A DNA stretch of 64,000 nt from Gekko japonicus (lineage: Eukaryota): assembly GCF_001447785.1 (NCBI RefSeq), contig NW_015168709.1, forward strand, positions 124,001 through 188,000, given 5' to 3'. The translations under genes and the position numbers were made by a program. The notes below the pieces were generated by a model. The model saw only the letters and a program-made list of their open reading frames with translations, was not told the origin of the DNA and searched no databases. Every line of letters starts with the position of its first letter. Position 1 is the first letter of the stretch. This document shows, in pieces, positions 1,725 to 63,990 of the stretch.

Positions 1725-3134
1725 AGTTCGATAGGCCAAGTCCATATCATTTTGTAATAAATCCTGTTTAAGCTCCATCACTGGTGCTAATGCTTGACTT
1801 AATAGTTCTTTTAATTTTCCCCCTTTCTGTTCTGGGATATCCTGGAAGCGTAGGACATACATTGATCTCTCCATTTGTAGTTGCAACAATTGTCCTTTAT
1901 CAGAAATTCACTCTTTTTCCACTTCTTCCAGCTTCTGTGTAATATCTTTAGTTTTTGCCTCCACTTTCTTAAGGACTATATCAGTCTTATCCGTTCTTTT
2001 GTCAATTCCCATCAGTTGCTTTTGAACACCATCGAGTTTGTTGTTGATGTTAGACATCTGCTCCAGTAGAGGGTGCAGTGCCGTTGCAAGCATGTTGGAG
2101 AAATCAGTAGCTGTTTCCGGCATTCCCGTAGGAGGTTTCTTCTCCGNNNNNNNNNNNNNNNNNNNNNNNNNNNNNNNNNNNNNNNNNNNNNNNNNNNNNN
2201 NNNNNNNNNNNNNNNNNNNNNNNNNNNNNNNNNNNNNNNNNNNNNNNNNNNNNNNNNNNNNNNNNNNNNNNNNNNNNNNNNNNNNNNNNNNNNNNNNNNN
2301 NNNNNNNNNNNNNNNNNNNNNNNNNNNNNNNNNNNNGCATTCCTGTAGGAGGTTTCTTCTCCGGCGCCATTTTTCTTCCTCTACCGGACATTGTTTACAC
2401 AAGAAAAAAGATTTTTAGTTTAAAGTAAAAGTTTTTTGATTTACATGTGCTTTGGACTTTTGCACCTTCCAGTTTTGTTTACAGTCTCTCTCGGTCAGTA
2501 TCATTTCCCCCCCTCTCAGCTTGTTGCTTGGGAACCGTTAAGTTTCATTGGGGGGGAATCCCCAACTCCTCCCCTCCCACTATTTTGCCTCATAGATAGT
2601 TCTGTTTATTTTAACTTGGCTCAACTGCTTTGAGGAGGATTGCTTAATTCACAGTTTATCGCTTTTGAAGTGTAGTAAGAACGTGTTTACACTTGATCTC
2701 TTGCCCACTCCATCCGGCAGTCAGCTCTAGATCCCATAACGGCTTTGCAACAGCAGGACTTCTTGGGGTAAGGAGAGCCTTAATTCCTTGGCCATCGCCT
2801 TGGAAGAGGCACCCCTCCGCACCCCAGGCAGAGAGCCCCCTGCAAGGGCTCCAGGGAGGTTCGGAATGATCCTTGGCGTGTCCTCATCAGAGCTCGATGG
2901 GACACGTCCGACCTGCGAGACACTAAAACTGGAAGTTTCCCGTGTCATATGTTAATTGGTATTTTTTCTTCTTCACTGTATATACATGTAAAACATGTAT
3001 ATGAGTAAAACATGTCCTGATCAAGTAAAATTAGGTGAGTTTCTTAGAATCTTGAGGGGATTAGAGGTGGTAATGGAGAAGAAGAGGGTGATCAAAGACT
3101 GGAATGTAACCTTGTATGTAAAGACTGTGTAGTG

Positions 3135-20592: not shown

Positions 20593-23559
20593 TTAATTGG
20601 ACATACTAGGGCGGCTTCAAATCACTTTCCTACTGAAGATATCCACTTTAAAAAGAACACCCATTATTATTTTTGTCCCTCTTGCATGCAAATACACTGT
20701 GTACATCCTTGAATCCTAAAAATTATATAAAGAAAAGATAAGAATCTAAATGGCCGGCACACAGAATTTCAAGCAGTAATGAGAGTTTGTGGGCTGTGGG
20801 TTACCATCTGCACTCTTCTTTGATGCCATCTGCCCACAAGCAGAATATCACCATAGGGGGAAATAGCAGGATGTCCTGAAATTATCAAACCACATAACCA
20901 CCAGTTACACAGGAAGACTTTCTGGGATTTGTAAGGAAATCTAAACCTATGATACAATCTCTTTGCAAAAAGAAAGGGAGGTAGGAAGCAGTGTATGTGG
21001 GGGGAGGGGAATCTTTGAAATTCTTTTGTGGTGGCCGAGGGGTGGGTTCCAGAAACTTCTGCATGGATTCATTGNNNNNNNNNNNNNNNNNNNNNNNNNN
21101 NNNNNNNNNNNNNNNNNNNNNNNNNNNNNNNNNNNTACTGTAAACTGAAAACTGTTGGCAAAGACAGAAATTATGGTAATTTTATGCAGTTCCCATTGCT
21201 GTGAGCGTTTAAAAATAGCTTCATTCCTAGCAAACTGGTGGTGCTACTGCACATATCAGTGCTCTGCAGGTTGACTTGGTGTGTGTAGCTTTTGCAAATA
21301 CTAACTGATTGAACACCAAGTGAAGCTACAATTATGTGAGCTGTTTCCATGCAGGTCCAACTGAGTAGCATTGTGCAGCTTATGATTTTCACTCAAGGGC
21401 TTGAAAGGAATTCATTTTTCTGACAGTTTGGAAAAGAATAGAGGAGTATCAGTGGCTGCTGTAACTAGTATTGCTATGGTGAATCAATTGGCTAAGTTCA
21501 GTGAAGGAGAGAGGTTATGCAAGTGGAGTTTATTTTCTATGTCAGAATTAGTGTTTGAAATATGTTAGATCTGTTTCTCTCTCTAGTAGTGCTAAAAGGA
21601 AATCTGACATGTGTTCTATTATCCCATGCACAATAGTTTTTAACAGCAATGAAGGTTGGAGGTAGTCAGAAGAGAAAACATACATGGCTTTGTTGTAATA
21701 AAAAAAAGTTTGTTTGTTTTGGTGGGAATGAATTTCCTGTGAATATAAATCTGAAAAAAGTAACAAATAGGTGCAAAATTTCATAAGTAAGCTGTGATCA
21801 ATGTTTTGATTAAAATTATATCTTTGAACATCTGTTAGAAGAAGCTAGGAATGCTCCTTTTACATTAAAGGAACAAAGGACTTTACTATGGTAGAAATCT
21901 GATTATATATTGGGTTGGATCCAATCTACTGTTCTGCAGGTGAAAAAGGATGGAGGGATTCTCTTTGACCAGCAAAAAGGCTGCATATGGATATAAAACA
22001 GCCACATGAACTGTAGGGAGTGGAACTGGACCAGAGTGAATGAAAAAGCAGGCTGGATCCAATTGATTGTATGTCTGGATTGTTAGGATGGATGTGTATA
22101 AAATCTCCTAATAATCTAAAATGCATGTTTTCACATTGCAATACTTTTATGATTTTAAGGTCATTGTGTTATAAATAAATATACAGACAAACAATAGTGC
22201 ACCTCAGAACTCAATAAATAGGAACTGGCATAGCATGGTGGTTAAAAAAACAAACTCTTACCGAATTCTCTTACTGGATTTCTCTTTTCCACAGGTTCAG
22301 TATTAACCTTAGACAAGTCATTTCTCCTAACAGCCGCCTCCCACTTTTCGGGTCTGTTGAAAGGTTTATAACTGCATGATATATGTGAACTACTTTGAAC
22401 ACAAAAACTGTTATCTAAATGCTCAGATTTCTAATGAACAACCCTGTTCTGCTCCAACAGTGGTATTAAGTCTGAAAGTCTTACCAGAGAGCACTGGCAG
22501 TCAATACAAGTGCTAGACCACGGTGGCAAGGCATGGGACATTGGTCCAGTTGCCCAGACAATAGAAATGTGCACCTCCACTCCAAGCAGCAGCATATTAA
22601 AGGAACAGTGCTTGTGAATAGTACCCAAAATGTACAAAAAGGGTGTTGGTGGGTTTATTTCTCCCATAACATTTGCATGTCCACCTGAAATGGCATGGTT
22701 TGTAGCAAAAATACAGAACAGTGAAACTTAAAAATGGCACCATATATCCATTTGGATATTTTTCTGTCACAGAATCAACAGGACTAAAGCATAAAGTATG
22801 GACGGCCATTATTTATGAAGTTCTGCTGAGGGGTGGTGAGAGAGGCTGCCCAAGGGGTCCTTCCCCCTGCCATTAATGCTGGTTGGAGCTGGGTGAAAAG
22901 AGCTTGGACTAAGCCAGTCTCCCGGGGCTTGGCATGCCACTCCAAGGGACAGTGGCTTGTGTGGAGAAGTGGCCACCGTTCACTGCCACCTCGGGAATGT
23001 GGAGGGATGGGTTTCTCCCCACCCCTACTTTCAAACCTTCCCACACACACTCTGTCTCTCTGCTGCCCAGGTTATACTTCCACAGCTTTGCTCCCTTCAG
23101 TTTGTTTTTAGTGTGCGCGTTTGCCTTGGCTTTCCCCTTCCTTTCGGCTACCCGGCCCACACGGTGAAGACTGTAGGTTCTGGTGTGGGGGGGAGGGGAG
23201 CTAGCTTGGGCTATCCAATTCAGGGCTTTTGCCCTTTAAAGAGCTTTTATTCTTTTCCCAGCAGCCATACTTTACTGTGCAGCTCTTAGGGGAAAGGGGA
23301 AGAGAGAAAGGAGGGGGGAAGGGGGCCCTTTCTCCAGCTCTTCCTGTCGCCCTTTTATTTGATTTTTTATTATGATGTTGGAGGTGATGTCATGCCCCCC
23401 CAGCGCTCCCCACTAAAACCTTTCTGGCTATGGGCCTGACTCAGGAGTCTTTGGAAAGGTACCTTGGCAAAAGCCCTTTGAAAGTCCAAGTATATAATGT
23501 CTACTGGGCCACCATTGTCTACATGCTTGTTCGCTTTCACAAAGAATGCCCTGGCCCCA

Positions 23560-24496: not shown

Positions 24497-25893
24497 TAGA
24501 TCATCTATTTCCCATCTTGGCTTCTTAAAAACTCTCGGGTTGTATGCCATCAGGAAGTGGAGACTTGGTGGTTTTTAATTTCCCCAGTAGGTCTAGAACT
24601 TCATCTCTGGTCACCTCAATTTGTCTCAGTCCTTCATAGTCCTTTCCTGATAATAGGGGCTGTGGCATGAGTACATGCCCCACACTTTCCACTGTGAAGT
24701 AAAAAAGTAATTGAGCTTCTCTGTCATCTCCCCATCTTCCTTTAGCAAAACTTTTATTTCATTGTCATCCAAAGGCCCCACTGCTTCTCTGGCTGGTTTC
24801 CTGTTCTACATATATATTTTTTAAAATGTTTATTGTTTGTCTTGATGCTTTTAGCAATCCACTCCTCAAAATCTCTTTTTGCATACATAATGATTGACTT
24901 ACATTTCTTTTGGCAGAGCCTGTGTTACCTCCTGTTCAATTTATTGGGGCAGACTTTCCACTTTTTAAAATAACCCTCTTTACTTTTTATCATTTTTTTA
25001 ACTTGCTTTGTTAACCATTCAGGCCTTCTTTTGGACTTGGCAGTGCCTTTCCTAACTTGTGGAATGCATTCTATTTGCACTCCAATTAGTGTGGTTTTAA
25101 ATTGCTTTCAAGCATTCTCTAGGGATTTGACTCTCTTGTATTTCCCCTTCAGCTGCCTTTTTACTATTCCCCTCAGTTTTGTAAAGTTTCCTCTTTTGAA
25201 ATCAAATGTTACAGTTTTGGACTGTAGGGGTAACTTTCCATTGACCTGAATGCTGAATTTAATAGCACTGTGGTCACTGCTCTCAATTAGTGTAACAGCC
25301 TCTACATCTCTCACCAGGTCTTGAGACCCGCTCAGAACCAAGTCCAAAATCACTACCCCTCTGGTTGGCTCTATGACAAACTGTTCCAGTGCACAGTCAT
25401 TTATGATGTCTAGGAATCTCTTTTCCAGAGCATGTCTTGAGCACATGTTTACCCAGTCAATGTGAGGGTAGTTGAAGTCTCCTAGTATAGTAACGTTATC
25501 TGCTTTAGTCACCTCCATTATTTCCTTCTCCATCTGAAGATCAGCCTCAAGAGTTTGATGAGGTTAGTGGTAGTATATCCCCCACTTTTAAATAAGCGTC
25601 AGGGCCCTGTATTTTCACCCATATAGCTTCTTTTGGGGAGTTAATTCCCCTGATGTTTTCTAACATTTGATTCTATACCCTCTTTGATATAGAATGCAAC
25701 TGTTTCCCTAACCCATCCTTCCCTGTCCTGCCTATAGAGTTTATACACAGGAATGACTGTATCCCATCGATTTCCCCATTCCATCATGATTCTGAAATAC
25801 CTACAATATCTAAATTGTCATTGAACACCAAGCACTCCAGCTCCCTCATCTTGGCTTGGAAACTTCTAGCATTGGCATGTAGACACCTATAAT
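24497..25893 (-). mobile_element. CR1 LINE ORF2 5' half (APE endonuclease and linker), decayed
   Basis: YRCLHANARS..GDFNYPHIDW..EPTRG..LDLVL..SSDHSAIKF. Confidence 0.92.
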
Positions 25894-29744: not shown

Positions 29745-29903
29745 TGGGTAGCCATGTTGGTCTAAAGCAGCAGAACAAAGTGTGAATCCAGTGGCACCTT
29801 TAAGACCCAACAAAATTTTATTCAATGTATAAGCTTTTACATGCACACACACTTCTTCAAACACAGTGGAACAGGTCTTAAAGGTGCCACTGGACTCAAA
29901 TTT
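29745..29903 (-). mobile_element. Penelope-like pLTR fragment with inverted partial copy
   Basis: CAGTGGCACCTTTAAGACC and its inverse GGTCTTAAAGGTGCCACTGG; degenerate hammerhead core; same family as 63860-63990. Confidence 0.7.
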
Positions 29904-30956
29904 CATTGTCTGTATGTTTACAAAAACACACACTTCTTGTAATTCTGGATTTTTAGTTTGTGCATAATTACTATGTTTTGTCATGCATCTTTTGGTGAAT
30001 AGAGACAGATAGATAGATATGGCAGAATAAGGCAGGAGGAAACAAGAAGTGAGTCCCTAGAAAGGAACAAGACAGAGAGGGAAATTTCCATACTCTGACC
30101 ACAGGACCCTTGCACACCCCTGCCCCACTATCTGAGCTTTTAACAGAAATTTCCCATATGTTTCATAGGTTTTTAAAACCAGCCATGGGAGATATGAATT
30201 GTGTCCTTTGGGAAGGGGGGAATCTTGAAAGCTGAATTTCTCAAGATCCGTATAAAGCTCTCAGATTTTGGACCACCCACACTTCTAGTCCTCCTGGGTA
30301 TAACACACACACACCTGGAAAACTCACTTTAGACAGTTTTAGAACCAGAGAAAAAATGTTTTGGTAGAAAATGTCAAGAAGGTTTGAAAGTTGATGTAAA
30401 TGAGTGTTAAAAGCCAACCATTTCTCAACAGTTTGAGTAACTGGGTGGGGAAAGCCTAGTCTGGAGGGAAAGATCTCTGTACTACACCTGAATGAACTTG
30501 AATTAGTCTCCTTAAGAGCCAGGATAGTGTAATGGATAAAGTACTGGATTCAGGCCAAGAAGACCTGGGTTTAAGTCCCTTCTCATCTATGAAGCTCAGT
30601 GGGTGGTCCTGAGCAAGTTACCATCTCTCAGTTTAAGCAACTCCAGGGCTGTTGAGAAGATGAAATAAGGAAATCTATTTTATCCGCACAACTGAACTCT
30701 TGGAGAGAAATCCAGACATTTACAGAGGAAATAATATTTCCAGAATAACTCCAAGAAGCTCAGAAACTTCCAACAGATTTTGTGGATCCTCACTGTCCTA
30801 GGTGTCCTAGATGAGGACTAGCACAGCCTACGCAACCTCACATGACCAAAGCTCTTTGGTGAGAAGCTAGTTAATGTGGATCATATCTACCTTTGTAAAC
30901 TCTGAGTTAGGCTACAATTTCCACATACTGGAATATTATTTCCAAATTGTTCATAT

Positions 30957-31085
30957 GTTTATTTATATTCTACCTTTCTTACAACATGGAGCTCAAAATG
31001 GTATTCACAGGATACCAAGGAGGTATCCCATCAGGCACTGACCAGACCTTAACTTCAGTATGATGGCTGTATTATATGCCTTACA
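30957..31085 (-). mobile_element. Old SINE-like element with 5S rRNA-derived segment and L2-type tail
   Basis: CCAAGGAGGTATCCCATC.AGGCACTGACCAGACC..TTAACTTC resembles the reverse complement of 5S rRNA; TTTATTTATATT tail. Confidence 0.45.
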
Positions 31086-31107
31086 ATCATGCCATTGATA
31101 GTTAATT

Positions 31108-32654
31108 CAGGGCTCTTTTTGTAGAAAAAGCCCAGCAGGAACTCATTAGCATAATAGGCCACACCCCTCACAGTGCAGAACTGCCCTCACAGAGGAGGGA
31201 GAGCTTGTACCTGAATAAACCTTGGTCTTAAAGGTGCCACTGGACAATTTTGGATTGCTAGCTGGGGGGGGGACGTGCAGATCTGCCCTCACAGAGGAGG
31301 GAGAGCTTGTACTTGAACAAACCTTGGTCTTAAAGGTGCCACTGGACTCTTTTGAATTGCTAGCTATCTCGAAGTCTAAGGGGGGTCTCTAAGACATTAC
31401 TGGGCTCGAATCTAACAAGTTTCATCATGATATAACAAAAGTAAAACCTAGTATTATTTATTTATTTATTTATTTGGGATTTATATCCCGCCCTACCCAA
31501 GCAGCCCCCCCCAAAAAAATTATCTAAAAATCTCAAGCCAGCTGCACCCCAGATTCAACCAGGGCTGCATCAAGAAAGGGGAGGCGTAATGGAACCAGTA
31601 TCCTGGAGTCTCAGCCACCACTGTTTGCTTGCCCCCCATATGAAATCCCCCTAAATTTGCTTGCCTCCCAACCAGAACCCTACATTTACAGATTTTAAAG
31701 GTACTCTGAAACAGACACACTTCCAACTAGTCAGCAAGAGGTCTAAGAGTGATGTCTAAGTGACCCCCTCCCCACAGGAAGTTCCAGTCTGACCGACTCT
31801 CTCCTCCCCTCTGCGTGCCCCAGCAAGCTTCCATTGGACTTAGCAAACTGCACATCCATGATCCGCTTACTAGAAGGCACACAGAGCAAAGGCAGCTGTC
31901 GGGCGGCCGACAAGCCCTGGCAGGGGGGCAGGGGAGTTCCCTTTCCCAAGCCAGACTCTCTTCAAAGCCCTCTTAAATTTAGAGTCGCACCAGCAAAACG
32001 GCATCAGTGCTGCCACTTGAGCCTCCTGGCCCGTGATTTCTGTTCCCACGCCACTTAAAGTGCACTTTTCTGCTCACCCCGCATCGCCAAAAGTTCCTTT
32101 CTCCTTGTGCACAAACCCCCGCAGCCCAACCCCGATCATGCTCTGTCTTTGTGCCATTGGGCCAGCCTTGCCTTCCTTTCTTCCTCCTGCCACCGCCCTC
32201 TCCTTCCCCCGCCCTGCCAAGTCAACACCCTTCAGCTTCTTCTTCTCCTCCCTCTTTTCGGAGTGCCCGTGGAGTGGAGCTTGTCCCCATCCCACCACAG
32301 CTGAGGAGAAAGTAACCGCCGCCCACCATTTACCGTCGTCTGGAGGAGCTCCTGGCGCCCGACCATGCTGCTGGCTCTGCTGCGTCCCTCTCCAGCGGGG
32401 AGCCCTGCTTGGCGGTGGCGGCCCTGCTGTCAAGGAACAGCCTGGGGAGGAGGCCCTGGGAAGGCGCCCCCTGTCCTGCAGCCAGCTGGTGGTGCTACAG
32501 CCAGGCCGTCGAGCGGGAGGACAACGACCCCAACTTCTTAAAGATGGTGGAGGGCTTCTTTGACCGGGGTGCCAGCATCATGGAGGACAAGCTGGTGGAG
32601 GGCTGCTGGGAGCAGGGGGTGTGGCCAAATTGGAGGGCAGCCAGAACACCGTTA
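31108..32654 (+). mobile_element. Non-autonomous hAT-type element carrying captured DNA (GLUD1 5' end); right TIR lost
   Basis: Left end CAGGGCTCTTTTTGTAGAAAAAG, the internal repeat unit and 24/24 nt at 32598-32621 are all shared with sibling 40135-40552 (reverse complement). Confidence 0.7.
32328..32600 (+). pseudogene. GLUD1: Glutamate dehydrogenase 1 exon-1 fragment, non-functional copy
   Basis: GCCGCCCACC-ATT(=ATG)-YRRLEELL...YSQAVEREDNDPNFLKMVEGFFDRGASIMEDKLVE; frame open for 91 codons; CpG-type changes (RRR to WWC, V to M); truncated mid-exon. Confidence 0.92.
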
Positions 32655-35600
32655 TAATAATACATCTCATTGCACAAATCACATACAATATGTATTTTAC
32701 TTATTTGCATGGAACTCCAGGAATTAGATTAGGCTCCAAGACTCAACTGCTAATTATGGATTGGATCTACTGGAACATTTCTACAGATGGAAGGATTTGT
32801 GCCCACAGAACTTGACTTTCTCATTTTGGACATTTTGGGCAACAACAGGAGGAGGAGACAAGAAAGACAAGCTCTGTGGGAAGAAATCCCTTCCATCCAT
32901 GAAAATGCTCCAGTGTATCCAAGCCCATGAATCTTACAGGGAGAGTTGAGGAACTTTAATCTCCCTACCACTAAGCTGACAAGACTGATGAATGAGCATC
33001 ATCTCCTTTTCCCTCTGAGTCTTGAACAAGGAACTACATCCCAGTTAGTGATGCCCAGCCAGGAAAGTTTGAACAACCATTGGTTCAGCTCATGCTCTGT
33101 TCACCAGTTGTGCACAGGAAGATAATTGTTCAGTGGACTGTTTGTCATCTTGTTCCTGCTCAGCAGGTGGTTTCGCTGGATTTCTTCCGAACAGGTGCAG
33201 TGCAATACAGCTCGCTTTTTCTGCATGCATGTTCTCACACAGCCTAGTTGAGTTCTACCTCCCCCGTCTTTGCTGTGCTGTTGCTACATTTGGCAGGCAG
33301 TTATTTAAATGAACAGTTATATTAGTCACAAATCATAGAAATAAATCATAAATACATGCTGTTTTTAAAATAATCCCACCACACATTGTTCATCCAACTA
33401 ATCTTTGGCAACATTAATGGCTGCTGATCTATTCGAACTAACAACATTCTTGCACATGCGTAGGACTTTTTACTTTTTTTTAGAGAGAAAACATGTTCAG
33501 AAGGTGATTGAGTCATTCGGCACCTTACTAAACAGACCCAGTGATCAGCAACTCTACCCATGTTTGAGCGTCACAGTCAAACATGTTGGTTTCAACTATT
33601 GTACATTCTTATTGCAAAATTCACAGCATCCCTAATCCAAGCCACTGTCTGCAGTATATGGAGCTCCTGCATCAGGGTACTGCTGGAAAGAGGCAAGTGT
33701 ATATCCAGTTGTCCTTTAAATGCCAAGTTGGAGGGAAATTTATCTTTTGGAAGTTCAGACCTTTCTTTAGTACCTTTGAACAGCCTCCTGCTCCTCTTTT
33801 CACCAGGCTAAAGTATTTCATTTTTCTTCATTGTTTTCTTAATTTTCCCTGGCATGAACCATTAATCTGACACAGAGGTCAGATCCAAAAGGAATGAATC
33901 ACATTAGACTATACATGTCCTCGATTAATATTCTCTGTAGAACTTGCCTTCTGTTGTTATCCAACCTTGACATCATGTTAGATTACTAATACAGGATAAT
34001 ATTTTGGGCAGAAAATGTAGTTATTCCTGAACTTAATAACTTTTACCAGCAAGAAGAGAGGAGAGAGTCATACCAGCAGGAAACAGAACAGTCAGCTGTG
34101 CGTGTGTGGACCACATGAATTAGTAATATTTCCTGAAATGAAAGCCAACAGTATTTTTTCATTGCTGACCTTCCTTCCTTCCATCTTCAATTTGTTTGTT
34201 CTCTGCACCCTTCAAAAACAATGGCATAAGGATCGTATAACTCATGCTATCCAAGCCACCCCTGTATAGCAGTGTACAATTTAGAGTGAACCAAAGCAAA
34301 CATGGTACTCAATACATATTTATCTCAGCAGAAGCTGTGGTTGAGGATGAATAGTTTGTGCTCTTTAATGGCATACAGAAAGTTCAGTACAGGAAGGATA
34401 GGAGTNNNNNNNNNNNNNNNNNNNNNNNNNNNNNNNNNTTCAGAACAGGCAAGATAGGAGTTGGCAGCAATGCTAAAGGAGCTGCAAAAAGGTTATACTT
34501 CTGAAAGACTGATTCTGTTCACCAATTGTGTAAACTTGCTACAGTTGGAACAACTCTTCTGTGAGACAAATGGCTACTGTCATGATCAAAGGTGTCTTAC
34601 GTGAGTAAACGTTCATTGGGCAGCAGCTGAAGATGTGAAATGTTGTCACAGTAACAGTTGTTTGTTTTAAAGTTAGGAACTCCATTGAACCTGAAGCCTG
34701 CTGATATGCACAAGTTCTCTTATTCAGTTCTTGCAGTCTCTCTTCTCTCAGGACAGAATCAAAAGTGGTGCTGTAGTTGTGCCAGAATCAGCATGAAATG
34801 CCCAGTGGATGAGGAAGCTGTTTTGTAGCTGGAGGCCGACTGGCCAGCAGTGGTATTAGGGCTACAGAGAGAACGGAGTGAGAACTGCCCTGATCATATT
34901 GTGTTCATCATAAAGGATGAAACCTTGGGATGCAATATTTAGCTAAACTATCTTCCTGTCATAGGTGGGGAAAGGGTGGGATAAATTGAGCATAAACGTC
35001 CTCTCTATTTTAGCTGTACCTTAGCTTTCAAGCGGCCCAGTGGAATTGTCTTACAAGAACGATATCTGACCTAAATGTTTCAAATGGAGACTGTGGTTAG
35101 TTATGATTGCAAGCTTTAATCACCAGTTTGTGCAGCTTTACATGCAGATTCCAAAATCTGAAACCCAAGGCAGCCCTAACTTTTACTGCAAGAGTTAAGT
35201 AAGTATGGCACTTGCATTAATTGTTGTAAATAGTTTTTAAAATGATTGTATGTTGTATTTTTCGTCACCCTCATTCTCAGACAAAAAAGGGGTTACAGAA
35301 ACCTTGTATGTCTTATAGTGAATGCTGTTTGAAGGAATGTTTTCTGCATAGCTGTGGCTTTGAAGGAATCATGTTATATCCTGTCGGAAACATTTTCTGT
35401 GGATTGGTGGAACACGAATAAGCCAGCAGAAGAACTGTATATCCTTAGAACAAATTAACTTCTACTTGTCAAATATTACCACGATGGCCTCATATTCACA
35501 TACCCAGTTATCTGTCCACAGTATATTGAAATTCAGCAGTAGTGACTATTCTGCCTTTTCCCCGTATATGTCTTGCAGTGCTTTCATACCTCCTGATGCC

Positions 35601-37042: not shown

Positions 37043-37468
37043 GTGTGGATGCCTATATTTACTTGAAACTAATCTGTGTTTAAATTCTTCGTGTCCTGTC
37101 TTTTCTTTTGCATAAGATTATCAGTGGAGGGGTTGGCGTGTCTGAGTATGTTTCTATTTGATGAAGCATAGATTCTTTAAATTATGTAAGCTGCCCTGAG
37201 CCCGCTTGCGGGGAGGGTGGGGTATAAGTGAAATAAAATAAATAAATAAATAAATATGTCTTCTGAAGAAGGCATTCCAACCAGTCATTACAGAATGATT
37301 ACATATGTCTTCTAAATGCCTGAATTTGCTTGTTTTCCTTTCCATCCCTTTCCTTCTCATTCCCTTTTTTTGGTGTTGTATATGTTATATTGTAGGTTGT
37401 TAAATGGTATGCTGTAGCTTTGGAAGAATTGGTGGAATGGTGGTATAATTTTTAAAAGAATATATACT

Positions 37469-39390: not shown

Positions 39391-40134
39391 GAAGGAGAGA
39401 AGGAAGCAGCAAAGGAAAGAGGCTATGGGGGCTTTCAGGAAAGGGAATAGTGGGGAAGGGGAAGTGAGATGCCTCCCGCAAGTCCTTGCAGGTTCCCTCT
39501 TGTGCTACTGTAATAGTTAAAATTCTTATTGCTTACATTGTATTTTCTAAGTATCAATTGGTTACAAGATTAATATAGTTAGAATTTTAATAGGAAATCT
39601 CAGGGCTTTAACCCTAGTCAAAGCCTGCTCAAATCTTCAGGGGCTTTCCTCCACTGTGGATGAGCTGACTGGCGGGGGGAACCTCCCCCTTAAACAGGGA
39701 CGTCATGTGGGAATACGCCGGTATTTGGGCAAACTCTATGGTTTGAGGGTGAAAAAACCATAGAGTTTTTCACAAATACCAGAGTGTTCCTGTGCGACCT
39801 CCCCAACACAATGACATCATTTCTGGGTGGCGTCATTATGTCAGGAACATTGTGCAACATCCCTGTCCACCCCTGGAAAGCCCCCCCAATCACCCCACTG
39901 GAGCAACGAGTGGACCTGGCAATGCTGCTTACTAAAGAAATTGGAGAGAAGAGCAGAGCCCTAGGAAGTGAGGTATTGAACAGGCGATTGACTATTTCTT
40001 GGTGCAAGTGTGTTTCGAGCTTGCCCTGCCATTCTTCCCTGGTAGTGAGAACTACTTTCTTTTTGTTGGAATGGAAGAATGAAGCAGCAGTTGCTATGTA
40101 AATCCTGCAGGATGACTGTAATTAAAGGCTGCAC

Positions 40135-40552
40135 CAGGGGTCATTTCCTGCAGGAGCGCACAGGAGCGGAGCTCCGGCAGTAAAGAGCCCAGCGGGCGGG
40201 CACATGCAACAAGCCCCACCCCCTGCTCCCAGCAGCCCTCAGTCAGAGCAAGAAGCAGCCAGGTAAGCTGCAGCGCTCCCCCCCCCCGGCCCCCTGGTCC
40301 AAAACAGTCCAGTGGCACCTTTAAGACCAAGTTTTATTCAGTTACAAGCTCTCCCTCCTCTACGGGGACAGATCTGCACATCCCCCCCCCCAATAGCTAG
40401 CAATCCAAAACAGTCCAGTGGCGCCTTAGTGGTGGCTGTTGCCTTCTGACACACTTCCAGTGATGTCAGGGTGTGTGGCATATGCAAATAAGCTATGCTG
40501 ATTAGTTATGTTAATGAGCTCCTGCCCCTCTTTTTCTACAAAATGACCCCTG
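40135..40552 (-). mobile_element. Non-autonomous hAT element (cargo-free sibling of the GLUD1 carrier)
   Basis: TIRs CAGGGGTCATTT / AAATGACCCCTG; perfect 8-bp TSD GGCTGCAC (40127-40134, 40553-40560). Confidence 0.92.
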
Positions 40553-40941
40553 GGCTGCACTAATGTCTGCTGCAGCACTACCACAAGTTCTACCTGACGC
40601 CCAGTCCATCCCCCTTTCTGACTGGGAGTTGATGATTTTACCATGACTGAAGTTTCAAGGGTTCTGGTAAGAAACTCCTAATTTTTATATTAGATTGTTA
40701 TTATTTGCTGAAATCGGAATTAATCATCACAGTTGAGTGTGTAACTCAGTCAGTACATTTTGCTATGACCTGAAATTTCCTTATAGCACTGAAAATATTA
40801 TCAAATATTGGTGCCAACTGACCATTCCCTCTGTTTTGAAATGGTCAGGTCTTGAAAATTAACTGAAATAGCTAAGCACTGGCAAAATGTAGTTAAGGAG
40901 TAAGAGCAGTTCTGTAAATCTTTCCTGCAGGCTTGTTATCA

Positions 40942-54790: not shown

Positions 54791-57443
54791 ACTCCAAAAA
54801 TTTGGGTGATTTATTTATTTACCTGTTTATCAAAGTATTCCACCTTTCCTCTTGGCTCTAGAGCTGTCTCGTTAAGGGGCCTCACATAGATTTTTTAAAA
54901 ATTAAGCATATATTCTCAAATTTGAAATAGCAAAAGTTGGAACACACATAACCAAGGGGTATGGGTCTTCTCTCTGGGCTTATTTACTTTTGTGCCTGAA
55001 AATACTATCCCAGTAAGTCCTAGTAGATAAGAGGACTTCCAATTCGTGAGAAAATCCTGATGAGACCATCCTTGTTTTGATTGTCTTCTTTTTTGAACTC
55101 AGAGCATATTTTTAATCCTACTGGAAGTTGACATTCAGTTCGTATGGGCATAAGCTGTATCCTTAATTATTGTGCTAACCTCATCCCAAAGGTATGTAAG
55201 GTTGACACAGTTATTAACAAAACAAATGGTGGACCTGTCCTGCACGTAATTGTGGGGGGTATCACATTTCCCCATCCACCATTATTTCCTGTTCCTCTTC
55301 CCTGAAAGCAACCAGTTCCTTATTCAAATCTCCTTAGAAATAGAGGCCTCTTGGAGGCACTCCAAATAGAAGGATGTGGGGCCAGAACCAGTGTTTGGAC
55401 TGGGCAGTGCTGTATGTCTCCTTGCAGAGGACAGTCCCCAAAGTGTGGTGATGTGTCATTTGGGGTGGTTCAAAAATTGGTTGGTGCAGCCAGGGCCCAG
55501 TGTCTGCCTGTGCGATTGTCTTGGGGGCACCGCACTTTGGAGCAGCTGGTACAAGAACTGTGCTTTGGACCAGGAAACAGGATATATCTTCTTGAAGGGG
55601 AGAGTCCCCTGAATCTGGGGGTATATAATATGTGGTGTTCCTGACCTTATTTTGGGGTTCAGAGCTTTCCAACTATCCTCAGTGTTTGTGGATGAATTCA
55701 TGAGTAAGTCACGAATAAGGAATGAATAAGGAACTGCGAATAAGGAACCAACTTCAGCCTCCTCCAACCTACCTTTTGTCTCCTCCATCTTTAGCTGTGT
55801 TTATTATTTACTTCATTTACACCCCACCTTTCTCTACAATGGAGACCCCCAAAGCAGCTTACATTGTTGTCTGCTCCTCCATTTTATCTTCACAACAACC
55901 CAGTGCGGTAAGTTAGACTGAGAATGTGTAACTGGCCCAAGGTCTTCCATGGCACAGTCAGGATTCAAGCTTGGGTCTCCCAGATCCTAGACTGAAACTC
56001 TAACCACTACAAATACTGGCTTTCATGGGGTGGTTGCTGCTGAACAGTAGCAAGCAGCCAGTCCTGGGTGAGTCATGCAAGTTGTGTGGTATCAGGTTTT
56101 TTAGTCATTGTTGCTGGGCCTGGCCCCAAAGAGTTCTCCCTCAAAGGACAAAAGAGCCCTGAAAAGTGCCCTCCCCCCTTTACTGACAGAAACCAAGGTT
56201 TTTAAACTGCAATACTGGTGTGGTTGCCTAGCAACAGCCACTGACGACATTCATTTCTTAACTGTTCATATGGTGCTTTTATTATTTTCTAGGATTTTAA
56301 CTCCCCAATGTATTTTTAAGGGTTCAAATTATTTTGCAAACCTGGGGCATTTTTCAGGTTTGTAGTTAATGACTCAAATCTCTGGATTAAATATCCACAG
56401 ATTTGGCCATGTTGGGAAAAGTGGGGAGGGGGCCGCATGGACTTGTGGGGAGTATTTCATTGTCCCTTCCCCCAATATTTCCTCTTTTCCTTCCCTGAAA
56501 GCCACACAGCCTTTTCCTGCCTCCTGCTCTACATCTCACCTACCAGCCAATCTACCTTTTGTCTCCCCCATCTTCAGCTATATTTATTATTTATTTACTG
56601 CATTTATATTGCCACTTTATCCACAGTGGGGACCCAAAGCAGCTTAAATAATTTTATCTTGACAACTACCCTGTGAGGTAGGTTAGGCTGAGAGTGTGTG
56701 ACTCGCCCAAGGTCACTCAGTGAGCTTCCACAGTATAGTGGGGATCAGAATTTAGGTCTCCTAGATCCTAATCTGAAACTCTAACCACTACAATAGACAG
56801 GCATTTGTGGGGTGGCTGCTGTTGGATAGTAGTGATCAACTGGACTTGGATGAGTCATATGAGCTGCATGATATCAAGTTGCCTGGTGGTTGCTGCCAGG
56901 TCTGGCCCCTATGAGTCCTCTCTCAAAGGTCAAAACAGCCCTAGAAAGAGGCCTGACCTCTACCCCCGCCCTTTCCTGACAGAAACCAAGGCTTGAAGGC
57001 TAGCAATACTGTTGTGCTTGTCTAACAAGCTGCAGGCACTCCTTTTATGGGGGGGTTAACTTCTCAATGTATTTTTCTTAGATTTCAGAATTTTCTACAA
57101 ACTTGGTGCTTTTTTCAGGTTTGCAGAAAAATCTTTCTTCTCTGTCCATGACCCCAAACTCTGGATTTAAGTATCCACCAATGGGATCATGTGGACAATT
57201 AGATACATTGATTATTACTGTATGCCCATTTTTGCTGTTTTCCCCCCCAAAAGGGCTAACAAATCTTGTTGGCTCAACATAACAAATTGACTGTTAGTGT
57301 CCCTGTATTACAAACACAGGGAAAATACTGGCCTTTAGTCCCACACACGTGAAACCAATGAGTTTTTGTTTCAAGTATATGTGTGCAAAACTAAGACTCT
57401 GAATATCTAACCTGCAGATTCTCAAATGAAAACCATTCAAACA

Positions 57444-61029: not shown

Positions 61030-62594
61030 GCTAGCACCTAATTTACTTAAAGGTGTTTCCGCAGAAAAAGACTATAGAGATAGATAGGACCAAGGGCTCT
61101 CTTCTGTCCTGCTTTCCCTTCAAGCAAAATCAAGAGAAGTGGCAGCAGTCTATCTGGCAGGCAGTGTCATGTTTTCACCAGGTCAGCAGCACCACAAAAG
61201 GGACGCAAAATTAAACTCTAAGGAAAGCTCTAAAGGCACTGGCAGTTTGGATGAGCACAGCTTACATAATTCCCTTTAAAATCCCTTCGGCCTTGCATTT
61301 GACTTCTCTCTCATGCCTGTATTCATTTATCTGTTCATTTGTCAGTGGCTTATTGTAGCTGCCTTTGACCCTCCTAAAGAGCATGCATCTCATTTTCAAG
61401 CACAACAACAGACTGTGATCCTCTCCTTCGAATTTTGAACATCTTAGAATTGACCTTTTAGTGGAATACTCGGGTAGCGAACTGGCTGGGAAGATGTTGC
61501 AGCACCAAGCGCTTTTGTGGCCACCAAAGCAAAGGAACAAGCGTCCTTTATCAATGAGAAAAAGATGAAATGTTTGCTCTGTAATGTTCTGCTGTAATTT
61601 GTTGTATTGAAACTTTACTATGCGCAGGTATTTAGTATTATCGGCTTAGATTTAGAAGGTATATTACTGTGGAAACATTCTGTCTTTATTGCCCATTTTG
61701 AATGAAAAGGCATAACATAGTAATCAAGAAACCGAACCGTGATTCAGGAGGTCACTGGTTTAAATGTAATATAAGCCATTTAGGAATAATAATCTAACCT
61801 ATTTTTCAGGTCACCTCCAAGCAGCTGGGGAATGGCAGTGGACTTTCTAGTAGAGAAGAGCAGGTGGGAGAGGGCTGCCTTCCTCTGTCAGCCTCTTTCC
61901 CCCAGGACCCCTGCCACCTGCCCATTCGTTGGGTGCAAATAGTACAAAATGGTCTGTTGAGGAGGATGGGTGGGTGTATTCCAAAGGAATTTCTTTACCA
62001 CCATTTCCCAAGTGTTCAGTGGTAGCCCAGGTTTTTGGACCATGGCTGCTCCTGAACATGTAGTTTATTTATTTTTATTTATCTATTTGGCGTCTAGCCT
62101 GCCCTCCCCCACAAGCCAGGCTCAGGGCGGGTGACAACAGTATATAAACAACATAAAACAACCAATCAAAACATAACAAACTATCTCAATTTATACTAGT
62201 TAGATCTTTGAATGCATTCATACAGTACCACCATCGTTAAGCAATTAAATAGACACTGCTAGTGCTTTATATTGAGTTGTTTTATAATTGAACTGTTTTT
62301 AGATGATTTTATGAGAAATGTAACTGTTATTTATGCATTTACTTTTCTGTAAGCCACCCTGAGCCTGCCTCAGTGGGGAGGGCGGGGTATACATTGAATA
62401 AAATAAATAAATAAATGCTAATAAACTACTGTCACCAATAATTCATCTGCTCCTGGAGGCTCCCTATATGTGTGCAATCGGGGGGAGGTCAGTTTATTTA
62501 TTTTTTATTTATCTATTTGGCGTCTAGCCCGCCCTCCCCCACAAGCCAGGCTCAGGGTGGGTTACAACAGTATATAAACAACATAAAACAACCA

Positions 62595-63859: not shown

Positions 63860-63990
63860 TTGTTGGTCTTAAAAGTGCCACTGGACTTTGATTCATTTGG
63901 GTAGCCCTGTTGGTCTGAAGCAACAGAACAAAATTCTACTCCAGTGGCACCTTTAAGACCAACAAGGTTTTATTCAAGGTATAAACTTCC
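63860..63990. mobile_element. Penelope-like pLTR fragments in inverted arrangement
   Basis: GTTGGTCTTAAAAGTGCCACTGG / CCAGTGGCACCTTTAAGACCAAC. Confidence 0.7.

What the first reader, a model, noticed from the sequence alone, without database searches (positions are those of the whole stretch)
31108..32654. Pack-TIR-like hAT transposon that captured the GLUD1 5' end
Seen: a GLUD1 exon-1 fragment (32328-32600) sits between sequence matching both arms of the complete, TSD-bounded hAT element at 40135-40552. The shared parts are the left end CAGGG..TTTTGTAGAAAAAG, the ~95-bp internal unit, and a 24/24 match GAGGGCTGCTGGGAGCAGGGGGTG (32598-32621 vs 40217-40240, reverse complement). That match begins exactly where GLUD1 similarity stops. 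There is no polyA and no exon 2. Known: Pack-MULE/Pack-TIR elements acquire host DNA and are much less documented in vertebrates than in plants. Inference: DNA-level capture by gap repair, probably through GAGGGC microhomology (KLVE-G), taking upstream promoter/5'UTR DNA too. The right TIR is missing, so this copy is immobile.
Basis: partly seen in the sequence, partly recalled or inferred. Interest (0 to 1): 0.85.

Follow-up and report, generated by a model that had tools for sequence, protein, structure and literature searches.

The report
Dead GLUD1 fragment beside broken hAT
A decayed copy of the first 90 codons of the glutamate dehydrogenase gene GLUD1 lies between two pieces of one small hAT transposon in a gecko-like genome. 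It is most likely a one-off DNA-repair patch of a kind already catalogued in animals, and the decisive comparisons could not be run here.

Summary
Window 40135-40552 is a complete 418-bp non-autonomous hAT with a 12-bp TIR and an 8-bp TSD. Window 31108-31367 matches its positions 1 to about 253 in reverse complement. Window 32598-32625 matches its internal positions 313-340 at 27/28, with no chance matches in shuffles.

Window 32328-32603 is GLUD1 codons 1 to about 90, closest to gecko GLUD1 at 69%. The start codon is ATT. The copy stops about 55 codons before the real end of exon 1, exactly where the hAT match begins, with a six-base overlap (GAGGGC). No other GLUD1 exon lies in the 64 kb.

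- The right "arm" is 28 internal bases.
- The last 78 bp, the right TIR and the TSD partner are absent.
- About 380 bp of unassigned DNA and a retroposon tail separate the left arm from the GC-rich block.

Pack-TIRs, mostly hAT and mostly single-copy gap fillings, are already documented in animals (PMC8277862). First-stage notes of this scan list about ten similar unverified claims on other DNA of this genome. Interest is low to moderate.

The parts
31100..31107 (.). The 8 bp (AGTTAATT) next to the hAT left terminus; a candidate half of a TSD, with no partner found
   Evidence: no copy with up to 1 mismatch preceded by a hAT end anywhere up to 37000.
31108..31154 (-). hAT terminus (TIR CAGGGCTCTTTT) plus subterminal DNA, in reverse complement relative to hat40
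   Evidence: 83% over 47 bp to 40506-40552; collinear alignment.
31173..31367 (-). Two tandem copies (spacing 102 bp) of the hAT internal unit of about 95 bp; hAT similarity ends near 31352-31367
   Evidence: the units are 93% alike; 87-89% to 40298-40427..
31368..31448 (.). Unassigned DNA directly after the hAT left part
   Evidence: no match elsewhere in the window; no match to hat40.
31449..31540 (-). 3' end of a retroposon on the minus strand, with an (ATAA)n tail and a GGGCGGGATATAAAT motif
   Evidence: the same motif lies at 37210-37256 and 62374-62547; read on the minus strand. The right boundary is approximate.
31750..32327 (+). GC-rich block with raised CpG; inferred to be GLUD1 promoter/5'UTR DNA, origin not shown
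   Evidence: GC 0.53-0.63 and CpG o/e 0.23-0.60, against 0.36-0.48 and at most 0.18 in the flanks; no Rfam or Pfam match. The left boundary is compositional only.
32328..32603 (+). GLUD1 exon-1 coding fragment, codons 1 to about 90. The start codon is ATT, three Arg codons read TGG/TGG/TGC, and there is one extra codon. It is cut about 55 codons before the exon's real end.
32598..32625 (-). 28 bp of hAT internal sequence (hat40 positions 79-106). It overlaps the last six GLUD1-like bases (GAGGGC).
   Evidence: 27/28, E = 2.8e-7; 0 of 100 shuffles give a match.
40135..40552 (+). Reference copy: a complete non-autonomous hAT (418 bp) with an 8-bp TSD, GGCTGCAC, at 40127-40134 and 40553-40560

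Best explanation
A resident copy of a small non-autonomous hAT element suffered a break in its interior. The break was mended by copying DNA from elsewhere (synthesis-dependent repair with template switching, also called gap filling). The filler ended with the CpG-island 5' end of GLUD1: probably promoter and 5'UTR, then the first 90 codons of exon 1. Synthesis switched back into hAT sequence at a short shared stretch (GAGGGC).

The result is a single-copy, Pack-TIR-like patch that probably never moved as a unit. Later the last 78 bp or so of the element, with its right TIR and TSD, was lost or was never restored. The GLUD1 piece then decayed as methylated, non-functional DNA: ATG became ATT, and CGN arginine codons became TGG/TGC.

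Shown:
- the pieces, their order and their orientation;
- the mid-exon cut-off coinciding with the hAT junction;
- the decay.

Inferred:
- that one repair event joined the pieces;
- that the upstream GC-rich DNA comes from GLUD1;
- the microhomology at nucleotide level.
For: - The hAT pieces are collinear and in the same orientation, at hat40 reverse-complement positions 1 to about 253 and 313-340.
- The 28-bp match is not chance.
- GLUD1 homology runs from codon 1 to KLVEG and stops where the hAT match starts.
- Real exon 1 continues for about 55 codons, so the end is a rearrangement breakpoint, not a splice site.
- GC and CpG are raised from about 31750 to 32620.
- There is no polyA, no flanking direct repeat of 9 bp or more, and no other exon.
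- Tan et al. 2021 find that animal Pack-TIRs are mostly hAT, mostly single-copy, made by transposition-independent gap filling, with microhomology at 67.6% of cases and breakpoints inside the TE.
- An 11-bp exact inverted match links the left arm (31157-31167) to the right piece (32616-32626); 1 of 2000 shuffles reached it.
Against: - The right-hand hAT piece is only 28 bp. Nothing of the remaining 78 bp follows it (local score 14 against 12.8 +/- 1.8 in shuffles).
- No right TIR and no TSD partner were found, so a second event has to be assumed.
- Same order and orientation of two independent fragments would arise by chance about one time in four.
- 31368-31750 is unassigned and holds a retroposon tail. 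The left hAT/cargo junction is therefore not shown to be a hAT/GLUD1 junction.
- The 11-bp inverted match depends on one substitution relative to hat40.
- The parent locus was never seen.
Confidence: 0.45

Rival explanations
1. Unrelated juxtaposition. A DNA-level duplicate fragment of the GLUD1 5' region landed by ectopic repair or segmental duplication, then eroded by deletions, next to an already truncated hAT copy. The 28 bp is a scrap of filler copied from some other hAT copy, or the remnant of a separate hAT reached by a microhomology-mediated deletion. The transposon had no causal role.
For: - Only 28 internal bases stand for the right arm, and there is no terminus or TSD.
- 380 bp of unassigned DNA and a retroposon tail lie between the left arm and the GC-rich block.
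- The 28 bp is 96% identical to hat40 while the left arm is 83-89% identical. The difference is not significant (my binomial estimate: P about 0.1).
Against: - A hAT-internal sequence begins at exactly the base where GLUD1 stops.
- That sequence lies in the order and orientation expected for the same element as the left arm.
- This family is sparse in the window: one complete copy in 64 kb.
Confidence: 0.3
2. A true mobile Pack-hAT. The cargo was acquired once, the composite element transposed, and this is a truncated member of a multicopy family.
For: First-stage notes on other pieces of this genome claim several hAT elements with first-exon cargo. They are unverified. Multicopy hAT Pack-TIRs exist in frog and alligator.
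Against: - There is no second copy in the window and no right TIR or TSD here.
- Only 1.4% of animal Pack-TIRs were multicopy.
- The one follow-up in this genome favoured a one-off repair patch.
Confidence: 0.1
3. An RNA-mediated chimera. Reverse transcriptase switched from a hAT-containing transcript onto GLUD1 mRNA and ran to its 5' end, so the copy would start at the transcription start site.
For: Only exon-1 sequence is present, so intron loss cannot be checked. The GLUD1 part includes the very start of the coding sequence.
Against: - There is no polyA or microsatellite tail and no flanking direct repeat of 9 bp or more.
- GC/CpG-rich DNA extends about 550 bp upstream of the start codon. 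That is longer than the roughly 100-nt 5'UTR I recall for vertebrate GLUD1 (my own knowledge, not tested).
Confidence: 0.07

Closest known systems
Animal Pack-TIRs (Tan et al. 2021, Nat Commun 12:4280, PMC8277862). One example is hAT-N8_XT, which carries 291 bp of the CAPSL 5'UTR in Xenopus.
   Same: A host gene 5' fragment sits inside a non-autonomous hAT. The breakpoints are internal to the TE. There is a possible microhomology at a junction. The case is likely single-copy and transposition-independent.
   Different: Their definition needs both TE terminals (at least 10 bp each) and an identified parent at 90% identity or more. Here the right terminus is missing and the parent was not seen. 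The filler is long (1.23 kb) and composite.
Rice Pack-MULEs (Jiang et al. 2011 PNAS 108:1537, cited in PMC5861414)
   Same: Acquisition of GC-rich gene fragments by a TIR transposon, which raises local GC content as seen here.
   Different: A different superfamily (Mutator, 8-11 bp TSD, long TIRs). They are often multicopy and transcribed. Neither mobility nor expression is shown here.
GLUD2, the hominoid retrocopy of GLUD1 (my own knowledge: Burki and Kaessmann 2004)
   Same: A duplicate derived from GLUD1.
   Different: GLUD2 is a full-length, intronless, functional retrogene. This is a 5'-only, mid-exon-truncated, start-less DNA fragment with no sign of retroposition.

Membership tests
hAT superfamily, non-autonomous element (reference copy 40135-40552) | 8-bp target site duplication | tested here: met
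   GGCTGCAC on both sides.
hAT superfamily, non-autonomous element (reference copy 40135-40552) | Short terminal inverted repeats beginning CAG/YARNG | tested here: met
   Perfect 12-bp TIR, CAGGGGTCATTT.
hAT superfamily, non-autonomous element (reference copy 40135-40552) | Relation to an autonomous element encoding a hAT transposase | not testable with these tools
   The 10 longest of the 194 open frames of 75 or more codons gave no transposase domain.
Pack-TIR (criteria of Tan et al. 2021) | Non-TE insert of 100-5000 bp flanked by two pieces of the same TIR element | tested here: inconclusive
   The left piece is 260 bp and the right piece only 28 bp. They are collinear and in the same orientation. 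The insert is 1230 bp.
Pack-TIR (criteria of Tan et al. 2021) | Both flanking pieces cover at least 10 bp of the TE terminals | tested here: not met
   The left terminus is present. The right terminus is absent.
Pack-TIR (criteria of Tan et al. 2021) | A unique parental copy elsewhere (at least 90% identity, length ratio 80-120%) | not testable with these tools
The parent is not within the window.
Pack-TIR (criteria of Tan et al. 2021) | The parental copy has no TE within 100 bp (excludes segmental duplication) | not testable with these tools
   For the same reason.
Pack-TIR (criteria of Tan et al. 2021) | Not a retroduplicate | tested here: inconclusive
   There is no polyA and no flanking repeat, and GC-rich DNA lies upstream. 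With only exon 1 present there is no exon junction to inspect.
GLUD1 (functional gene) | Start codon, complete exon 1, further exons, catalytic domains | tested here: not met
   ATT at the start. The copy is cut at codon 90 or so, and no other exon lies in 64 kb. It is a pseudogene fragment, not a gene.

The most novel reading that the evidence does not exclude
This hAT family in this gecko-like genome repeatedly picks up CpG-island first exons. First-stage notes claim PTPN1, a 5' end upstream of SORCS1, and others. That would be a vertebrate counterpart of the GC-rich, 5'-biased acquisition of rice Pack-MULEs, and this locus would be one eroded member of the set.
Probability: 0.1. Interest if true: 0.6.

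Novelty: new member of a known kind. Interest (0 to 1): 0.27.

Why it matters
If the single-event reading is right, this adds a squamate example to the catalogue of animal Pack-TIRs. It would show a promoter plus first exon of a housekeeping gene copied into a transposon by break repair. On its own the copy is dead (no start codon, truncated, CpG-decayed) and immobile, so it has no evident consequence for the organism. Its main value would be as one data point in a genome-wide test of whether this hAT family is biased towards CpG-island 5' ends.

Tried and rejected
- **The search for homologous proteins with the 91-aa fragment:** no hit in the allowed length range.
- **Read laying on 29900-34400 with runs X1, X7, X4 and X5:** There is therefore no read or contig evidence on copy number, orthologous sites or expression.
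- **The search of earlier findings:** blank by place, by sequence and for GLUD1 or glutamate dehydrogenase.
- **Right TIR and TSD partner:** none found. The candidate at 56150 is not a hAT end on reading.
- **Residual right arm after 32625:** none.
- **LINE-type flanking repeats:** none of 9 bp or more.
- **Rfam on 30800-32520 and Pfam on open frames of the cargo and its flanks:** blank.
- **GTGGC motif as a shared transposase-binding site of the two pieces:** rejected. The motif in the right piece has the wrong orientation and arises from one substitution.
- **Literature search for gecko hAT families:** returned noise.

Full report
**What is in the sequence**

Window 40135-40552 is a complete 418-bp non-autonomous hAT element ("hat40"). 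It has perfect 12-bp terminal inverted repeats and an 8-bp target site duplication, GGCTGCAC, on both sides.

BLASTN of hat40 against the window and of 31000-32800 against the window place three hat40-related pieces in the finding's range. All are in reverse complement:
- 31108-31154: the terminus plus subterminal DNA, 83% over 47 bp.
- 31173-31367: two tandem copies of the internal unit of about 95 bp, 87-89% to hat40 and 93% to each other.
- 32598-32625: a 27/28 match to hat40 positions 79-106.

The exact 24-mer occurs only at these two places. None of 100 dinucleotide-preserving shuffles of the window gave a match, even with three mismatches allowed.

A global alignment shows the left piece is collinear with hat40 (reverse complement) positions 1 to about 253, with a few indels and one extra unit. 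The right piece is positions 313-340. About 59 bp of the element would lie between the two breakpoints, and positions 341-418 are missing.

**The GLUD1 piece**

The frame starting at 32328 reads as the GLUD1 N-terminus, through the presequence and the conserved DPNF..KMVEGFFDRGAS..EDKLVEG block.
- phmmer against 1.84 billion representative proteins gave GLUD1 exon-1 products, best E = 1.7e-11.
- Among named squamate GLUD1 proteins taken from a 90% cluster, the closest N-termini are geckos: Paroedura picta 69% and Gekko japonicus 66%. The window therefore comes from a gecko-like squamate.
- Position 32328 is ATT where all GLUD1s have ATG.
- Where geckos have RRR(Y), the copy has WWC(Y) from TGG TGG TGC. 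This is the CGN-to-TGN pattern of methylated CpG decay.
- One extra codon is present.

Read-through products of exon 1 in other vertebrates all continue to ...HRTPCKGG before diverging, and full-length squamate proteins continue LRTRES... after KLVEG. The copy therefore ends about 55 codons before the true end of exon 1, at a rearrangement breakpoint and not at a splice site.

tblastn with two gecko GLUD1 proteins finds only 32328-32603 in the 64 kb. There is no exon 2, and the parent is not within about 31 kb on either side.

**The junctions**

The last six GLUD1-like bases (GAGGGC, codons E-G) are also the first six of the hAT match. A microhomology of up to six bases or more is therefore possible. 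Its true length needs the parent's nucleotides.

After 32625 nothing resembles the remaining 78 bp of the element: local score 14, against 12.8 +/- 1.8 for shuffles.
- No right TIR, and no partner for the 8 bp next to the left terminus (AGTTAATT), exists downstream.
- There is no A-run.
- No direct repeat of 9 bp or more flanks the block.

On the left, hAT similarity ends near 31352-31367. It is followed by about 80 bp of unassigned DNA. Then comes the tail end of a minus-strand retroposon, with an (ATAA)n tail and a motif shared with 37210-37256 and 62374-62547. More unique DNA follows.

From about 31750 to 32620, GC is 0.53-0.68 and CpG observed/expected is 0.23-0.60. The flanks show 0.36-0.48 and at most 0.18. 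This looks like a decayed CpG island extending about 550 bp upstream of the start codon. Neither Rfam nor Pfam recognises anything in it.

**How it most likely arose**

The coincidence of the GLUD1 breakpoint with the start of hAT-internal sequence matches the picture drawn for animal Pack-TIRs by Tan et al. 2021 (PMC8277862). So do the shared orientation and correct order of the two hAT pieces. That paper reports:
- 370 cases in 100 genomes, 208 of them in hAT elements;
- 98.6% single-copy, attributed to transposition-independent gap filling of breaks inside resident TE copies;
- microhomology at 67.6% of cases;
- breakpoints skewed to the TE interior.

I therefore favour a one-off repair patch in a resident hAT copy, followed by loss of the right end and by neutral decay (confidence 0.45).

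The main rival (0.30) is that the transposon is a bystander. In that reading the left arm is an independently truncated copy, and the 28 bp is filler or the remnant of another copy. The missing terminus, the missing TSD and the 380 bp of unassigned DNA on the left all keep this reading alive. The order-and-orientation argument alone is worth only about 1 in 4.

An 11-bp exact inverted match between the left arm and the right piece (1 of 2000 shuffles) is weak extra support for one element. It hangs on a single substitution relative to hat40.

A mobile multicopy Pack-hAT (0.10) and an RNA-level chimera (0.07) are less likely, for the reasons given under the rival explanations.

**What could not be done**

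The decisive comparisons were out of reach: the species' own GLUD1 locus, other copies of the junctions, and orthologous sites in relatives.
- The look-up of sequencing runs found two DNA runs of the source organism holding 72-76% of the words. Three related organisms held 7-15%, and several RNA-labelled runs held 5-7%.

**Comparison and novelty**

The locus works like an animal Pack-TIR. It fails one tested criterion of the published definition (both TE terminals present), and the parent-copy criteria could not be tested. I file it as a probable, eroded new member of a known kind, not as a confirmed one.

First-stage notes of this scan list about ten further "Pack-hAT" claims on other pieces of the same genome, several with first exons. 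The one follow-up (BMPR2 exon) also concluded a one-off repair patch of a documented kind. These are leads, not evidence. They motivate a genome-wide test of whether this family is biased towards CpG-island 5' ends, as rice Pack-MULEs are towards GC-rich DNA.

Noticed in passing
window 40135-40290: On the + strand, the left 130 bp or so of hat40 reads like a non-coding first exon ending in a consensus splice donor (CAG|GTAAGC, near 40262-40270). The 28-bp match at 32598-32625 lies inside this 'exon', antisense to the GLUD1 piece. It could be the 5'UTR exon of the family's autonomous ancestor, or itself cargo.
   Followed up: no
window 29787-29897 and 63863-63987: Another repeat family shares a module of about 45 bp (CCAGTGGCACCTTTAAGACC...) with the hAT internal unit. 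The hAT's 95-bp unit therefore seems itself to derive from, or to be shared with, a SINE-like repeat.
   Followed up: partly
window 25111-25563 (minus strand): An open frame with the endonuclease domain of a LINE (PF14529, E = 2.9e-09): a LINE fragment.
   Followed up: partly
window 30800-33000: About ten RNA-labelled runs of the source organism, from several studies, hold 5-7% of the sampled 31-mers of this stretch. Three related organisms hold 7-15%. Which part they hold could not be determined.
   Followed up: no
window 2147-2336, 21075-21135, 34406-34438: Runs of N (190, 61 and 33 bases); left as they are.
   Followed up: no
window 32328-32657: The GLUD1-derived frame stays open for 110 codons and runs 18 codons into the hAT-derived and flanking DNA before a stop. 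In DNA with 65% GC this is only mildly unexpected (about 6% by my estimate) and is not evidence of selection.
   Followed up: partly
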